Source: Fonticula alba ATCC 38817 (taxonomy: Eukaryota > Protista > Nucleariida). From it: a DNA stretch of 29,625 bases. The notes beneath the pieces are model-generated. The model saw only the letters and a list, made by a program, of their open reading frames with translations. It was not told where the DNA came from and made no database searches. Where the stretch lies: the NCBI GenBank assembly GCA_000388065.2, contig KB932207.1, one strand, 5' to 3'. The translations under genes and the position numbers were made by a program. Every line of letters begins with the position of its first letter. Position 1 is the stretch's first letter. Positions 1,062 to 16,491 of this stretch are shown piece after piece.

Positions 1062-2273
1062 ATGTTTTCCGCTGGCCGCTTTGGCGCGTCGGCCCTCCTG
1101 CCACTGCTGGCTGCTCGGCCCCCATCCCTGTCCCCGTGGCGCGTGGCCGCCTTCTTCACGGTTTCGGCTGTTCTCCGACATGCGGACGCCAATGCCGCGC
1201 TGATGCAGTTTGTTTCCGGCTGGTCGTCGGCCGATCTGGATGAGGTGAAGGCATTCAATGCGCGCGGGTTCGACGTCGACTCCATCCCCAAGAGTGCGCC
1301 TGCGCCGCTCCGTCCAGTCCACTTGCCCTTCGCGCTGCCTGACCGCGTGCTGACTGTTTCCTTCGGCCCCTCCCCTCCTCGCCCTTGCCCGCTCCATGGG
1401 GCACATGGGTGTGCTTTTGCCCTGCCCCCGGCCCGGCCCGGCTCCTCGACCCCGGCAGACGATCTCGTCGTCAAGTACATTCGCAGCCGCGGCCCTGGCG
1501 GGCAAAACGTCAACAAGGGTACGTGGGACCCCCCGTCCGATGTCTCCCCGGCCGGCCATATGCTGACACCGTCCTCCCCTCGCCCCTGCCCGCGCCCTCT
1601 TCTCCGGCTGTCCCTCTCTCGCTCTCTCGCTCGCGTTTTCTCTCTCTCTCGTCCCCTCTTCCGCTGGCATGGCATCACCCAGTCAATAGCAAGGCCGACG
1701 TGCGCATTGTCCTCGGCACGGTCGACTGGCTGCCTCGGTTTGTCATCGAGAACCTCAAACGCATGGTATGTGTGTGTGTGTGTGCATACACTTATCTACC
1801 CGCCTGCACGTGTCTTTTCGCTGATCTCCCTCCATCCTCGCCATTGGCCCTGCCGGTCGCCTGCCGTAGGAGCCCAATCGCATCAACTCGGCCGGCGAGT
1901 TTTTCGTCCAGTCAGACACCATGCGCACGCAGTCCGCCAACTACCAGGCATGCCTCGAGCGGATCGCCGAGATGATCAATGAGGCGGCCCGGTTGCCGGG
2001 CGAGACGTCCGATGAGCAGCGGAAAAAGGTCGATCAGCTGTACGTGCCCATCCAGTAGTCCCTTGGCATCGCATTCTCTCCCCCTCCCCCCCCTCCCCCT
2101 CCCTCGCTTGGCACTCCCAGCGGGTAGGTGTCCCTCGACCGAATACTCATGTGCTTCATCCCCCCGCTGCTTGCCCTGGCCAAAGGAAAAAGGCCCAAAA
2201 TGAGCGTCGCATCCAGGAGAAGAAGCGCCGTGCCTCGATCAAGAGCGCCCGGCGGCGCCGCGATGATGACTAA
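1062..2273 (+). CDS. ICT1: ICT1/ArfB(YaeJ)/Pth4-family peptidyl-tRNA hydrolase, mitochondrial, catalytic GGQ intact (array copy 1, ~210 aa)
   Basis: Exons 1062-1293, 1459-1518, 1683-1765, 1870-2039, 2186-2273 (633 nt, in frame). Presequence-like N-terminus [48 protein letters not shown] (RF-1 GGQ motif); RINSAGEFFVQSDTMRTQSANYQACLERI; basic tail KKAQNERRIQEKKRRASIKSARRRR typical of ArfB/ICT1. Confidence 0.93.
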
Positions 2274-3139
2274 CCCCTCCACTGTCAGGACCGGGACATG
2301 CACTCTTTGTCCATCTCTTGAGGCCGTGGTTTGGCCGTCACACCCGCAAAATAGAAAAGAGTCCTTTCCCTGTGAGAGGGGTCGCGTGGTGGCAAGTACA
2401 GGAACCCGAGTCGGAGGGCGGGGGGGGGGGGGGGGGGGGGGGGGGGGGCAGGGCGGGGATGTTGAGCTGGCCCTCCTCGCAAGATGCGGGCCATTCTGGT
2501 GATAGCTTCCAATAGCGTCACATTCTACGATATAAAAATGGCTCACATATAGCAGAAAAAGCAGCACGGTGGCCTTTTAGCAGATCCGGTCGCGTGACAG
2601 TCGCACAAACAGGCCGAGCCCCTTAATTGTCCTGGCCCATGGACATCTTAGCTGAATGATGCCTTTCGTGGGCCGTGTCGGGCGCATCTTCTCGATCGTA
2701 CGCGCCGCCCTTTCGCGCCTTGAGAACGGGGCCGGGCGGGGCTCGGCGAGGGGGGCGCCTCGTCCGATGTCGGGGGGCGGGTGCCGGCCCCGCGCGGCGC
2801 CGAATGGCACTGGCCAAATCCCCCCGGCAACCGTCCCGGGGGTGGTATCCCTTCGGGTTGGCTTGATGGGGAGGCCAACACATCCCTCGATGCGTTTTTT
2901 TTTCCACAGCCATGCCCGGGGTGTGTGCGGTGGGGCAAGTAGGGCGCGCGAAGTCCACACTCCTGGTGACTTGCTCTCGGGGGGATCCCCCACTTGCCAG
3001 GGCGCGCTGCTTGCCCCGAGGCACGCGGCTCGGGACTCCCCGCTGGCACACCGCCAGGTGGTGGCGATCCTCCCCCCCCCCCCCCCCTGCCCACGCTGTC
3101 TGCGTGTCGGCCCTGGCCCGCGCCTCCCATTTGGGGAAG

Positions 3140-14294: not shown

Positions 14295-14760
14295 CTCCGC
14301 CCGCGTCTCCGACGCCTGTGACACCCTCCGGCCCCCTCGCTCGCCACATGCCAACCCTCGGGGCCGGGCCCTGGGCGGCACGCTCCATGCCCCCAGGCCG
14401 ACCAGTGTCTGAAGGGGGGTGTTTCAGTTGATCCATCGGGGCGGGGCTGCGGGGGGGGGAACGGAGCAAGGGGGCTCCTATCTATATCCGGCTGCCCCGC
14501 GATGGGCTCACTTCCCGTGGGCCTCTCCCGTGTTGGTGCGTTTGCGCAACCACACCGACACCTCCCAGGGAGGAGCGAGGAAAAAGGGCGGGGATCGCGC
14601 TTCCGTGTGGATTGCAGCGCGCGTCACCGCCTGCCAGCCCGCGCTGCTCTTCCTCCCCCCCTCCCCCTCCCCCGGTCCTTCTGTCCCCCTCTGCTGCTGG
14701 CCGTCTCCCCGGCCTGCTTCCCCCAATCGGTCCCTTGATTCCGCCACCGCCCCGGCCCAC

Positions 14761-16491
14761 ATGTCCCTCGCGCATGTGCCTCACCACGCATGCAGCATGT
14801 CCTCAGCCGACCGAGCTGCCTCCACATCGGTCCCCCAGCATGCCGGGCGTTTCCGCCATCCCTTGGATGCCCTCCCCGTAGGTGATGGGCAGCTGCGGGC
14901 ATTTGCGGCCGCCTGGTCCGCGGAGGAAATCCAGGCGGTTCGCGCCTTCCTCATGCGCGGGTTCACCACATTCTCCATCCCAAAGGGTATGGATCCCCCC
15001 TTGCGCATGCCGACCGCACCGTCCGCCGACCTGGCCCTCCGCGCGAGGGGGTTCGCTCTTTGACATGTCGACTGTTGCCCATACGCCAGCGGACCTCATC
15101 ATCCGATACTTGCCCTTTGGCCAGCCAAATGAACACGCCCCTCGCCAATACACCGGCGTGTATGGGCGGAGGCTGGCCCCGGGCGAGTCGCTCCTCGTCC
15201 CGCGGACAGGGCGCCCCTACCCGGGCTTTGGCCCCGGCGGTCGCGCTGTCCACAAGGGTATGTGTTCCCTCGTGCGCGAGGCCGTTCTTGCTTCCTTTCC
15301 TCCCCTCCCTCTTTTTTTCCTTCCCCCCCCCTCTCTCTCTCTCTCGCTGGCACATCGCCCACTAAACGCGGGCACCTGCTGCTGGCGCTGCCTTCTTCCC
15401 TCATCGCCCTTTTTCCGCCGCCCCTCGCTCTCATGGCGTTGTTTCCCGGCAACCCCCGGCCGCCCTCCCTCGGGCAGCCAACAGCAATGTCGAAGTGCGC
15501 CTCCCTCTCGACAAGGTCGCCTGGCTGCCAAAGTACGTGGCCCACAACATCCGGCGTATGGTGCGTTCCCCCGGCCGGCCCTCTTCGCCATCTGCCGGCC
15601 CTTGCCCCTGGCGCTCACCGGTCCTTGCTGCCCTTGCTGCTCCGACGCTCGGCCCAGGAGCCCCTCCGGGTCAATGGGTCCTTCGAGCTGGTGGTCTTTT
15701 CGAACCACGGCTACTTCCAGGCAACCAATTTCCACAAATGCCTGGAGGAGATCGTCCGGATTGTCAAGGCAGCAGCCATTCTGCCCGACTGGGAGGGCGA
15801 CGCCACTCGATCGACGATAGGCCTCCAGTGCGCTGCCCCCTCGGCCGCTCTCCCTCCCCGCCCTGTGATGGCCTTGACATGCGGTCCTGACGCATCAGTC
15901 CCCCCCCCCCCCCCCCCCCCTTTCCTTTCGGCCCCCCCCCCTTCCGCTCGCCGGTCTGCCCGCGCGCTCTTCCTGCCCCTCCCCCGTTCGCCTCCCCGGC
16001 CAGAAGATCCCTCGCCGTCATGTCCTCCGATAGCAGCGCCTCTGCTGGCACCCCGGTGCCCCCGATGATGACCAGCCAGATGAACTCCGAGTCGGCCATC
16101 CTCACCATCCGCGTGGTGCGCGAGGCTTCCCTCCCTCGCTCCCGGACAGATGGGCGGCACGGCTGCGCCGCTGGTGTCGTGGCTGGACCAGTTCACGGCC
16201 TCGCCACATTGTGAGAAGTATGTTTGCTGATGCTGCNNNNNNNNNNNNNNNNGGCCACTTTCGCCTGCTTCTCTGTCTCGCTCCCGTCTTCTACCGGGTG
16301 GAGGATATGGCCGCCCTCCCCCCCCCCCCCGCCGTCTTTCCTTTCGCCCATCCCCTCCCCCTTTGGCGGATGGTCCAATTTTGTTCCATGCCCCTCCCCC
16401 CAGTGCCCAAGTCGACAACGAGCGCCGGCTGAGAGGGAAGAAGCGTCGCTCTGAAATCAAGGCCGCCCGGCGCCTGATCGCCGATCGGTGA
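14761..16491 (+). CDS. ICT1/ArfB-like paralog with GGQ changed to GGR (array copy 6)
   Basis: Exons 14761(or 14797)-14986, 15090-15257, 15478-15560 (83 nt), 15658-15827 (170 nt), 16404-16491. LRAFAAAWSAEEIQAVRAFLMRGFTTFSIPK; DLIIRYLP...GFGPGGRAVHK; NSNVEVRLPLDKVAWLPKYVAHNIRRM; RVNGSFELVVFSN..FQATNFHKCLEEI; tail AQVDNERRLRGKKRRSEIKAARRLIADR*. Confidence 0.88.
16237..16252. other. Assembly gap (N run) in intron 4 of copy 6
   Basis: 16 Ns. Confidence 0.95.

What the first reader, a model, noticed from the sequence alone, without database searches (positions are those of the whole stretch)
1062..16491. Tandem array of six ICT1/ArfB-family genes: one active GGQ hydrolase plus five intact GGQ-less paralogs
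Seen: six co-oriented genes with shared architecture. Exon 3 is 83 nt in all six, exon 4 is 170 nt in five, and intron phases are 1,1,0,2 (copy 5 has only the first three introns located; copy 2 intron 2 needs a GC donor). The proteins are strongly diverged but keep open frames, splice sites and the fold motifs (FAAAW..EL, VEVR.PL..V.W.P.Y..N.RRM, R.N..GE.V..S, N...C). Only copy 1 has GGQ. Established: in class-1 release factors, ArfB/YaeJ and ICT1/mL62, GGQ is required for peptidyl-tRNA hydrolysis and the basic tail senses an empty mRNA channel; eukaryotes usually carry one ICT1-type gene. Inference: this is a lineage-specific family of release-factor pseudoenzymes that may still bind ribosomes without releasing peptide, e.g. 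as rescue antagonists, hibernation or stress factors, structural mitoribosome subunits or assembly factors. I know of no described array like this, but could not search.
Basis: partly seen in the sequence, partly recalled or inferred. Interest (0 to 1): 0.92.

Follow-up and report, generated by a model that had tools for sequence, protein, structure and literature searches.

The report
Six ICT1-like genes, five without GGQ
The amoeba Fonticula alba carries a row of six genes descended from the mitochondrial ribosome-rescue factor ICT1; five have lost the catalytic GGQ motif yet at least four of these are transcribed, all five are kept by selection, and four retain the ribosome-binding tail, so they are probably non-cutting ribosome binders of unknown role.

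Summary
The window is Fonticula alba contig KB932207.1. It holds six co-oriented ICT1/mL62-type genes with intron phases 1,1,0,2. Exon 3 is 83 nt in all six. Exon 4 is 170 nt in five. Only copy 1 has GGQ.

- **Gaps:** both assembly gaps lie outside coding sequence, one upstream of copy 3's ATG and one inside intron 4 of copy 6.
- **Transcription:** RNA contigs show GT..AG joints at my predicted introns for copies 3-6. Copy 5's transcript runs through its stop codon, so it truly lacks the basic tail.
- **Copies 1 and 2:** their expression was not shown here.
- **Divergence and selection:** the copies are 29-45% identical. Omega is about 0.19 among the five GGQ-less copies and 0.04 in the tail exon.
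- **Origin:** the six form one clade (100/98) and the five GGQ-less ones a sub-clade (100/97).
- **Family:** Pfam RF-1 misses the GGQ-less copies. Their profile hits mL62/ICT1 in the PDB at E=7e-21. AlphaFold models of copies 3 and 6 have the ICT1 fold.
- **Relatives:** no relatives of the GGQ-less clade were found outside Fonticula.
- **Precedents:** single GGQ-less release-factor derivatives are known (mS35, a tick ICT1-like protein, plant PrfB3).

This is a new variant of a known kind. Its function remains inferred. First-stage notes of this scan had already flagged this same stretch.

The parts
1062..2273 (+). Copy 1: ICT1/mL62-type gene with intact GGQ (GPGGQNVNK at the end of exon 2), a presequence-like N-terminus and a basic tail; 5 exons, 210 aa
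   Evidence: Model. Pieces hit Pfam RF-1 at 21.9 and 17.7 bits. Best outside matches are ICT1-type proteins of early fungi at 33-47% identity. It has the shortest branch in the clade, 0.42. It was not found in the protein database, and its transcription was not shown.
3236..4324 (+). Copy 2: GGQ-less paralog, 199 aa; exon 2 is 144 nt; intron 2 needs a GC donor at 3672; tail pattern kept (R-I-x2-K-x6-K-x2-R)
   Evidence: The called gene on the public record has the same span and 199 residues. P0003 is a partial alternative model. An in-frame upstream ATG near 3140 would add a presequence-like extension. The GC donor was not checked with RNA here.
9276..10529 (+). Copy 3: GGQ-less paralog, 200 aa (loop GPRGK); tail pattern fully kept; highest RNA contig depth
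   Evidence: All four introns appear as GT..AG joints in RNA contigs at depth 80-102. The model is identical to P0004, the NCBI 'variant'. AlphaFold gives pLDDT 82.6 with ICT1 topology. Foldseek top hits are ICT1/mL62, mS35 and ArfB.
11414..12453 (+). Copy 4: most diverged GGQ-less paralog, 199 aa; the VEVR strand is replaced (AGLCLNL); tail partly kept (R-H-x2-K-x6-M-x2-R)
   Evidence: Introns 2-4 appear as joints at depth about 7. Intron 1 contains a long poly-C run and no joint was listed for it. The called gene has the same span and 199 residues. Branch length is 2.14.
13214..14081 (+). Copy 5: GGQ-less and tail-less paralog, 169 aa from ATG 13214; 4 exons; stop TAG at 14079-14081
   Evidence: Identical to H696_04486 (P0001) apart from that model's upstream start at 13058. 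Joints at introns 1 and 3, with contig length implying intron 2 is also spliced. Contigs run unspliced through the TAG to about 14178 and start at 13124-13170, so ATG 13058 is outside them. Depth is 61-69.
14761..16491 (+). Copy 6: paralog with GGQ changed to GGR and a 36-codon insertion just upstream (exon 2 is 168 nt, 15090-15257); 244 aa; tail pattern fully kept
   Evidence: Identical to H696_04487 (P0002). The intron 1 joint is seen, and the loose end at 15257 continues into exon 3. AlphaFold gives the same fold, with the insertion (residues 86-122) at low confidence.
9173..9182 (.). Assembly gap inside a poly-C run, 94 nt upstream of copy 3's start codon
   Evidence: It is not in any reading frame of the family.
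16237..16252 (.). Assembly gap inside intron 4 of copy 6 (15828-16403)
   Evidence: RNA contigs of 941-944 nt fit exons 1-5 plus about 105 nt of 3' UTR. This was inferred from lengths only, because the laid stretch ended at 15270.

Best explanation
**Shown.** Fonticula alba has one orthodox ICT1/mL62-type gene (copy 1) and, beside it, five paralogs that came from it by tandem duplication within the Fonticula lineage. Their common ancestor or its descendants lost the catalytic Gln. Four of the five also lost one or both glycines. The exon that encodes the catalytic loop became free to vary in length (60 to 168 nt) and is predicted to be disordered. The rest of the protein stayed under purifying selection: the N-terminal helix, the beta-sheet with the ICT1-specific alpha-i helix, the long alpha helix and, in four of the five, the basic C-terminal tail. 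Copies 3-6 are separately transcribed and correctly spliced.

**Inferred.** These proteins no longer release peptides but still dock on ribosomes, most likely mitochondrial ones. They would use the same tail residues that YaeJ and human ICT1 need for ribosome binding. They would therefore act as non-hydrolytic occupants of the empty mRNA channel and A site, or of an mL62-like structural site.

**My split.**
- Ribosome binding without hydrolysis: about 0.6.
- Within that, A-site/mRNA-channel occupant (modulator or antagonist of rescue, or recruiter of other factors): about 0.35.
- Within that, integrated structural or alternative mL62-like subunit: about 0.3.

Copy 5 has no tail and must work through the globular domain and the N-terminal helix alone.
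For: - **Gene models and motifs:**
- **Organism and public gene calls:** these match my models for copies 2, 4, 5 and 6, and match the NCBI 'variant' for copy 3.
- **Transcription:** spliced RNA contigs have GT..AG joints at my coordinates and zero depth in the intergenic stretches.
- **Selection:** omega is 0.20 for all six (2dlnL about 149 against omega=1) and 0.19 for the five GGQ-less copies (2dlnL 129). Every exon lies at 0.04-0.23, and the tail exon is lowest at 0.04.
- **Origin:** the six form one clade (100/98) and the five GGQ-less copies one clade (100/97). Copy 1's branch is 0.42 against 0.75-2.14 for the others.
- **Family:** a profile of four GGQ-less copies hits mL62/ICT1 chains at E=7e-21, over the loop through to the tail. 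It hits ArfB at 2e-5.
- **Fold:** AlphaFold models of copies 3 and 6 show beta1, loop, beta2, alpha-i, beta3, alpha and a long C-terminal helix. Foldseek top hits are ICT1/mL62, mS35 and ArfB.
- **Tail:** the pattern R-[L/I]-x2-K-x6-K-x2-R is kept in copies 1, 2, 3 and 6 and partly in copy 4. It equals YaeJ R118/L119/K122/K129/R132 and ICT1 R187/K191/K198/R201, which are required for ribosome binding and activity (PMC3950681).
- **Precedent:** mS35 is an ICT1-derived inactive domain that became a ribosomal protein (PMC6514570).
Against: - No experiment or proteomic datum here places any copy on a ribosome or in mitochondria.
- Only copies 1 and 3, and weakly copy 6, have a presequence-like N-terminus. 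Copies 4 and 5 begin with acidic residues, and so does copy 2 as annotated.
- Copy 5 is well expressed and constrained without the tail, so the tail is not needed for at least one member's function.
- Copy 4 has changed two of the five key tail positions.
- Copy 6 keeps GG and might retain some hydrolysis.
- The omega estimates rest on saturated synonymous sites, on ungapped (conserved) columns only, and on small partitions.
- Transcription of copy 1, and so its role as the active partner, was not shown.
Confidence: 0.6

Rival explanations
1. They are new structural proteins of the Fonticula mitoribosome, or interchangeable mL62 variants. They would be recruited the way mS35 was, with no role in rescue at all.
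For: - mS35 is an ICT1-derived, Gln-less domain with a structural role (PMC6514570).
- mL62 itself is an integral large-subunit protein in mammals (PDB hits).
- The N-terminal helix motif is conserved in all six copies (omega 0.16). A similar motif occurs in fungal ICT1 homologs.
- Tail-less copy 5 is still constrained and expressed.
Against: - From my own recollection, which I did not check here, the solved fungal mitoribosomes carry no integrated mL62, so integration in the fungal-side lineage is uncertain.
- Several copies lack a clear presequence.
- RNA depths differ about tenfold between copies, which is odd for stoichiometric subunits.
Confidence: 0.3
2. They left the ribosome and became RNA-binding or regulatory proteins. 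The model is plant PrfB3, a release-factor paralog without GGQ that stabilises one mRNA.
For: - PrfB3 is a precedent (PMC5897788).
- The five proteins have diverged strongly from one another (29-45% identity), which would fit different targets.
- Some copies lack a presequence, and copy 5 lacks the tail.
Against: The exact spacing of the five tail residues needed for ribosome binding is kept, under the strongest constraint of any exon. That is hard to explain for a new RNA target.
Confidence: 0.15
3. At least copy 6 (GGR) is still a peptidyl-tRNA hydrolase, so the family is not wholly a set of dead enzymes.
For: Copy 6 keeps GPGG and the flanking residues (GPGGRAVHK against GPGGQNVNK in copy 1) and a full tail. 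From my own knowledge of bacterial release factors, the glycines matter more than the Gln for the rate of hydrolysis.
Against: A 36-residue, low-confidence insertion sits directly before the loop. Arg is bulky and charged in place of the Gln, which is conserved in release factors generally (PMC3472500). Copy 6 groups with the other GGQ-less copies on a long stem.
Confidence: 0.1
4. They are transcribed pseudogenes in neutral decay.
For: Loss of the catalytic motif; loss of the tail in copy 5; no Pfam hit for any GGQ-less copy.
Against: - All frames and all splice sites are intact at 29-45% identity.
- Omega is 0.19, and omega=1 is rejected (2dlnL 129).
- Exon lengths and intron phases are conserved.
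- Splicing is correct in RNA.
- The folds are confidently predicted.
Confidence: 0.03

Closest known systems
ICT1 / mL62 (MRPL58), mitochondrial codon-independent peptidyl-tRNA hydrolase and large-subunit protein
   Same: Same fold, with the alpha-i helix. Same overall length. Same C-terminal basic tail with the R-L-x2-K-x6-K-x2-R pattern. It is the best PDB profile match (E=7e-21). Copy 1 also keeps GGQ and a presequence-like N-terminus.
   Different: Copies 2-6 lack the GGQ Gln, and four of them lack one or both glycines. The loop varies in length. Copy 5 has no tail. There are six genes in tandem instead of one.
ArfB / YaeJ, bacterial alternative ribosome-rescue factor B
   Same: GGQ-type domain plus linker plus basic tail that senses an empty mRNA channel. 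The tail residues shown to be essential in YaeJ are kept in four of the six copies (PMC3950681).
   Different: The match is weaker (E=2e-5). The Fonticula genes are eukaryotic, contain introns and have an extra N-terminal helix. Five have no catalytic Gln.
mS35 (MRPS35), small-subunit mitoribosomal protein with an inactive ICT1-derived domain
   Same: An ICT1-derived domain with the alpha-i helix that lost the catalytic Gln and is kept for a non-catalytic ribosomal role (PMC6514570). It appears among the structural matches.
   Different: mS35 is larger, has two flanking helical domains and is pan-eukaryotic. The Fonticula copies match it only weakly by sequence (E=0.04). They keep the ICT1 tail and are sister to Fonticula's own ICT1, so their origin is independent and recent.
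Extra GGQ-less ICT1-like protein of ticks (Ixodes scapularis and relatives)
   Same: A lineage-specific, expressed ICT1 duplicate of normal size that lost GGQ (PMC3472500, section 26).
   Different: It is a single gene in arthropods and arose independently. No tandem family is reported, and its function is also unknown.
PrfB3 / mtRF2b of land plants
   Same: A release-factor paralog that lost GGQ and gained a non-catalytic role (PMC5897788; PMC3472500 Table 1).
   Different: It derives from RF2, not ICT1. It acts in plastids, binds the petB 3' UTR and has no ArfB-type tail.

Membership tests
ICT1/mL62-ArfB (bacterial-type release-factor peptidyl hydrolase domain, Pfam RF-1 PF00472) | Catalytic GGQ motif in the loop between beta1 and beta2 | tested here: not met
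   Met only in copy 1 (GPGGQ). Copy 6 has GPGGR, copy 3 GPRGK, copy 4 GLRGY and copy 5 GPNDE. Copy 2 has FGPAN at the exon end.
ICT1/mL62-ArfB (bacterial-type release-factor peptidyl hydrolase domain, Pfam RF-1 PF00472) | Domain fold: beta1, loop, beta2, inserted alpha-i helix, beta3, alpha helix | tested here: met
   AlphaFold models of copy 3 (pLDDT 82.6) and copy 6 (78.1) show this order of elements. Foldseek top PDB hits for the copy 3 model are ICT1/mL62, mS35 and ArfB. Copies 2, 4 and 5 were not modelled.
ICT1/mL62-ArfB (bacterial-type release-factor peptidyl hydrolase domain, Pfam RF-1 PF00472) | Basic C-terminal tail with the residues needed for ribosome binding (YaeJ R118, L119, K122, K129, R132; ICT1 R187, K191, K198, R201) | tested here: met
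   The pattern is present in copies 1, 2, 3 and 6. Copy 4 has two changes (L to H, K to M). Copy 5 has no tail (PMC3950681).
ICT1/mL62-ArfB (bacterial-type release-factor peptidyl hydrolase domain, Pfam RF-1 PF00472) | Significant sequence-profile match to the family | tested here: inconclusive
   A profile of four GGQ-less copies hits mL62/ICT1 at E=7e-21. phmmer with copy 5 reaches GGQ-bearing ICT1-type proteins at E=8e-7 and weaker. Pfam RF-1 gives no hit at E<=1 for full-length copies 3, 5 and 6, nor for partial copy 2. Copy 1 could only be scanned in pieces (21.9 and 17.7 bits against a cutoff of 35).
ICT1/mL62-ArfB (bacterial-type release-factor peptidyl hydrolase domain, Pfam RF-1 PF00472) | Peptidyl-tRNA hydrolysis on stalled ribosomes; association with the mitoribosome | not testable with these tools
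   Needs biochemistry, fractionation or cryo-EM.
mS35 (MRPS35) | Inactive RF-type domain flanked by two helical domains, about 300 residues or more, one orthologous gene across eukaryotes | tested here: not met
   The copies are 169-244 aa with an ICT1-type tail. The profile match to mS35 is only E=0.04 against 7e-21 for mL62. They are sister to Fonticula copy 1 in the tree.
C12orf65 / MTRFR | GGQ present, no alpha-i helix | tested here: not met
   The alpha-i helix is present in the models (residues 107-116 in copy 3 and 150-159 in copy 6). GGQ is absent in copies 2-6. A separate MTRFR-like gene elsewhere in this genome was noted by the scan but not checked.

The most novel reading that the evidence does not exclude
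Fonticula has evolved a small set of catalytically silent ArfB/ICT1 mimics. They would compete with the one active factor for stalled mitoribosomes, or swap into the mL62 site. That would give regulated, non-hydrolytic handling of empty-channel ribosomes (blocking, hibernation or hand-over to other factors). It would be a bacterial-type counterpart of the Dom34/eRF1 split that arose by tandem duplication.
Probability: 0.3. Interest if true: 0.8.

Novelty: new variant of a known kind. Interest (0 to 1): 0.55.

Why it matters
Release-factor domains that lose GGQ but are kept by selection show what these proteins do besides cutting. The known cases are single genes: mS35, a tick ICT1-like protein and plant PrfB3.

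Here one genome offers a graded natural series next to its active parent:
- GGQ (copy 1)
- GGR with an insertion (copy 6)
- loops without the glycines (copies 2-5)
- one copy without the tail (copy 5)

Four of the five GGQ-less members are shown to be transcribed. That is a ready-made dissection of which parts of ICT1 serve ribosome binding and which serve catalysis. If the proteins sit on mitoribosomes, it would also be an example of ribosome-rescue machinery being repurposed in a close relative of fungi. The practical value is modest until binding or localisation is shown.

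Tried and rejected
- **Alignment of separate exon pieces to build a full profile.** MAFFT misplaced the fragments, so the alignment was not used.
- **Word-index protein search with copy 1's exon 1 to exon 2 read-through.** No hit, so no public protein id for copy 1. 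Its annotation status stays unknown.
- **Exact look-ups of P0003 and P0004 in the contig collection.** Not on record.
- **Profile search with the four GGQ-less copies.** It returned neither the public copy 2 nor copy 4. I take this as a limit of the index, not as absence, because both are called genes on the contig.
- **Metagenome scan with the GGQ-less profile.** It found only uninterrupted matches of 28-38% identity on seven contigs, which look like ordinary ArfB genes. No relative of the GGQ-less clade turned up.
- **tblastn of all six proteins on the whole window.** Only low-complexity noise outside the six genes, so there are no hidden or decayed copies in 4325-9275.
- **Pfam on long ORFs of 4681-9170 and 23766-29100.** Nothing significant.
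- **Alternative model for copy 2 intron 2.** A phase-0 GT donor near 3612 with the acceptor AAG|ACA would give about 180 aa, not the 199 aa on record. I rejected it in favour of the GC donor.
- **Phase-0 donor GTGAGT for copy 4 intron 1.** Rejected because it does not keep the frame. The phase-1 donor T|GTGCGC at 11585/11586 does, and it sits 23 codons after the Trp as in every other copy.
- **Spliced proteins of copies 1, 2 and 4.** They have no reference, so I did not type them into the search or structure tools.

Full report
**What is there**

The window is GC-rich (62-75%) and its genes have introns. A read-through query from copy 5 matched one protein, H696_04486 of Fonticula alba. Its sequence equals my hand-built model of copy 5, apart from a longer annotated N-terminus. 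The gene lies on contig KB932207.1 of assembly GCA_000388065.2. Fonticula alba is an opisthokont of the order Rotosphaerida, which by common knowledge lies on the fungal side of the opisthokonts.

I read all six genes from the three-frame translation and fixed every exon boundary. The coordinates are listed under the observation check and the parts.

All six share these features:
- five exons (four in copy 5);
- intron phases 1,1,0,2;
- an 83-nt exon 3;
- a 170-nt exon 4 (155 nt plus a stop codon in copy 5);
- an exon 1 that ends exactly 23 codons after a conserved Trp.

The genes called on the public record have the same spans and product lengths as my models for copies 2 (199 aa), 4 (199 aa), 5 and 6 (244 aa). 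Copy 3 is annotated as 250 aa. An NCBI 'variant' of 200 aa (P0004) equals my model. The 250-aa form is what retaining intron 4 would give (my computation: 518 + 235 nt = 753 nt).

**The assembly gaps**

Gap 9173-9182 sits in a poly-C run 94 nt upstream of copy 3's ATG. Gap 16237-16252 sits inside intron 4 of copy 6. Neither interrupts a reading frame. For copy 6, RNA contigs of 941-944 nt fit exons 1-5 plus about 105 nt of 3' UTR. That is an inference from lengths, because the laid stretch ended at 15270.

**Transcription**

Four runs from 2012 are held as assembled contigs of about 11-12 million letters each. They contain 0.40-0.42 of the sampled words of 11400-16200, which is about what the exons of copies 4-6 would give. 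I laid them on 9272-15270. They show GT..AG joints at exactly these positions:

| Copy | Joints seen | Contig depth |
|---|---|---|
| 3 | 9453/9583, 9669/9846, 9928/10040, 10209/10445 (all four introns) | 80-102 |
| 4 | 11810/11900, 11982/12086, 12255/12369 | about 7 |
| 5 | 13391/13485, 13816/13923 | 61-69 |
| 6 | 14986/15090, plus a loose end at 15257 that continues with the first bases of exon 3 | 12-22 |

Depth is zero in the stretches between the genes, so this is RNA and not contaminating DNA.

Copy 5's contigs run unspliced through the TAG at 14079-14081 to about 14178. They begin at 13124-13170. Copy 5 therefore truly has no fifth exon and no basic tail, and the annotated ATG at 13058 lies outside the contigs.

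For 1000-4400 (copies 1 and 2) the same runs hold only 0.13-0.17 of the words, about half of what two full transcripts would give. No more reads could be laid, so expression of copies 1 and 2 is not shown. Copy 2's GC donor rests on the sequence and on the matching public gene length.

**Are they one family, and which one?**

The copies are 29-45% identical. BLASTP E-values for c1, c2 and c4 against database copies of c2, c3, c5 and c6 run from 1e-14 to 1e-39.

Copy 1 has the sequence GPGGQNVNK followed by a typical ICT1 continuation. Its pieces hit Pfam RF-1. Its best matches outside Fonticula are ICT1-type proteins of early-diverging fungi (Funneliformis, Lobosporangium, Linnemannia, Coemansia) and unnamed environmental proteins, at 33-47% identity.

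The GGQ-less copies get no Pfam hit at all, even at E<=1. Three other lines of evidence place them in the family:
- An exhaustive phmmer search of 1.8 billion representatives with copy 5 gave only Fonticula paralogs below 1e-10. The remaining hits, at 4e-8 and weaker, were almost all GGQ-bearing ICT1-type proteins.
- A profile of four GGQ-less copies hits mammalian mL62/ICT1 chains at E=7e-21, from the loop to the end of the tail. It hits ArfB at 2e-5 and mS35 at 0.04.
- AlphaFold models of copy 3 (pLDDT 82.6) and copy 6 (78.1) show an N-terminal helix, beta1, a low-confidence loop, beta2, the alpha-i helix, beta3, a long helix and a long C-terminal helix. Foldseek returns ICT1/mL62, mS35 and ArfB as top matches.

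**History**

I built a tree of the six copies with 34 ICT1-type proteins. The six form one clade (100/98) and the five GGQ-less copies a sub-clade (100/97). Copy 1's branch is 0.42 against 0.75-2.14 for the others. The root is not known. With the root among the outside proteins, the simplest reading is duplication of the resident ICT1 gene in the Fonticula lineage, loss of the Gln, faster evolution, and further tandem duplication.

No member of the GGQ-less clade was found outside Fonticula. This holds for the exhaustive search, for a profile word search, and for a metagenome scan that found only uninterrupted ArfB-like matches. Eukaryotic genomes could not be scanned directly with these tools.

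**Selection**

A codon model gives these values:

| Data set | Omega | 2dlnL against omega=1 |
|---|---|---|
| All six copies, 135 ungapped codons | 0.20 | about 149 |
| Five GGQ-less copies, 138 codons | 0.19 | 129 |
| Exon 1 | 0.16 | 31.5 |
| Exon 2, alignable part | 0.11 | 26.3 |
| Exon 3 | 0.23 | 23.5 |
| Exon 4 | 0.15 | 50.0 |
| Exon 5 (tail) | 0.04 | 27.9 |

The per-exon rows are for the five GGQ-less copies (four for exon 5). These values are rough. Synonymous sites are saturated and only alignable columns enter. Together with intact frames, intact splice sites and correct splicing, they still exclude neutral decay.

**What was kept and what was lost**

Exon 2 encodes the catalytic loop and is the variable module. 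It is 60 nt in copy 1 and 87-168 nt in the others. The loop is predicted with low confidence in the models.

| Copy | Loop sequence | Tail pattern |
|---|---|---|
| 1 | GPGGQ | kept |
| 2 | FGPAN (no glycine pair) | kept |
| 3 | GPRGK (second glycine only) | kept |
| 4 | GLRGY (second glycine only) | two substitutions |
| 5 | GPNDE (no glycine pair) | no tail |
| 6 | GPGGR, after a 36-residue insertion | kept |

The tail matters because Kogure et al. showed that YaeJ needs Arg118, Leu119, Lys122, Lys129 and Arg132 for ribosome binding and activity. The equivalent ICT1 residues are Arg187, Lys191, Lys198 and Arg201 (PMC3950681). The pattern R-[L/I]-x2-K-x6-K-x2-R was scored.

A motif resembling the N-terminal helix motif (Trp, then acidic residues, then Phe, ending near IPK) also occurs in fungal ICT1 homologs. 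It is therefore probably an older feature of the family and not an invention of the array.

**How it most likely works**

Shown: a transcribed, selectively maintained family of ICT1 paralogs without the catalytic Gln.

Inferred: they no longer release peptide but still dock on ribosomes through the conserved tail and domain. I put about 0.6 on ribosome binding without hydrolysis. Within that I slightly favour occupation of the empty mRNA channel and A site (about 0.35) over an integrated, mL62- or mS35-like structural role (about 0.3).
- For the first: the strongest constraint falls on exactly the residues needed for that binding mode.
- For the second: tail-less copy 5 is abundant and constrained, and mS35 is a direct precedent (PMC6514570).

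An off-ribosome RNA-binding role like that of PrfB3 (PMC5897788) gets about 0.15. Residual hydrolase activity in copy 6 gets about 0.1. That rests on my own knowledge that the glycines matter more than the Gln. Pseudogenes get about 0.03.

Localisation is open. Copies 1 and 3 have a presequence-like N-terminus, and copy 6 does less clearly. Copy 2 has one only if an upstream in-frame ATG near 3140 is used. Copies 4 and 5 do not.

**Comparison with what is known**

GGQ-less derivatives of bacterial-type release factors are on record:
- mS35 (PMC6514570);
- an extra ICT1 without GGQ in ticks, expressed and of unknown function (PMC3472500, section 26);
- mtRF2b/PrfB3 in plants (PMC3472500 Table 1; PMC5897788).

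Full-text searches for Fonticula with ICT1 or with mitochondrial ribosomes found no description of these genes. The kind is therefore known. What is new is a five-member, tandem, transcribed family next to its GGQ-bearing parent, with a graded series of loop and tail states. I rate it a new variant of a known kind, with interest 0.55.

Noticed in passing
window 10181-10474 (copy 3 intron 4, 10210-10444): Unspliced RNA contigs cross intron 4 of copy 3 at depth about 20, beside spliced contigs at 48-102. Retention gives the 250-aa form that NCBI lists as the main product. In that form the basic tail is replaced by unrelated residues, so it is tail-less like copy 5.
   Followed up: partly
window 4325-9275: About 5 kb between copies 2 and 3 has no called gene on the public record, no ICT1-like remnant and no Pfam hit on its long ORFs. 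It holds (CT)n at 6350-6379 and 7270-7355 and (TG)n at 8994-9074.
   Followed up: partly
window 11382: In all four runs, copy 4's RNA contigs carry 19 letters before position 11382 that occur nowhere in the window. No AG precedes that position. This could be an upstream exon outside the window, another joint, or an assembly artefact.
   Followed up: partly
window 1062-2273: The only GGQ-bearing copy was not found in the protein database with its exon 1 to exon 2 read-through. The RNA contigs cover only 0.13-0.17 of the words of 1000-4400. It may be unannotated, weakly expressed, or both.
   Followed up: partly
window 17084-22706 (+): Downstream neighbour: a 1536-aa UvrD/Srs2-type helicase gene with Pfam UvrD-helicase, AAA_19 and UvrD_C on the public gene call.
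   Followed up: no
window 14882-15560: NCBI lists two further isoforms of copy 6. Variant 1 starts inside intron 1. Variant 2 uses a donor inside exon 3 and shifts the frame. Both look like minor or aberrant splice forms.
   Followed up: no
window 10640-10930: A long G-rich/C-rich tract just after copy 3 reads as poly-Gly on one strand and poly-Pro on the other. The read-laying tool skipped it as a repeat.
   Followed up: no
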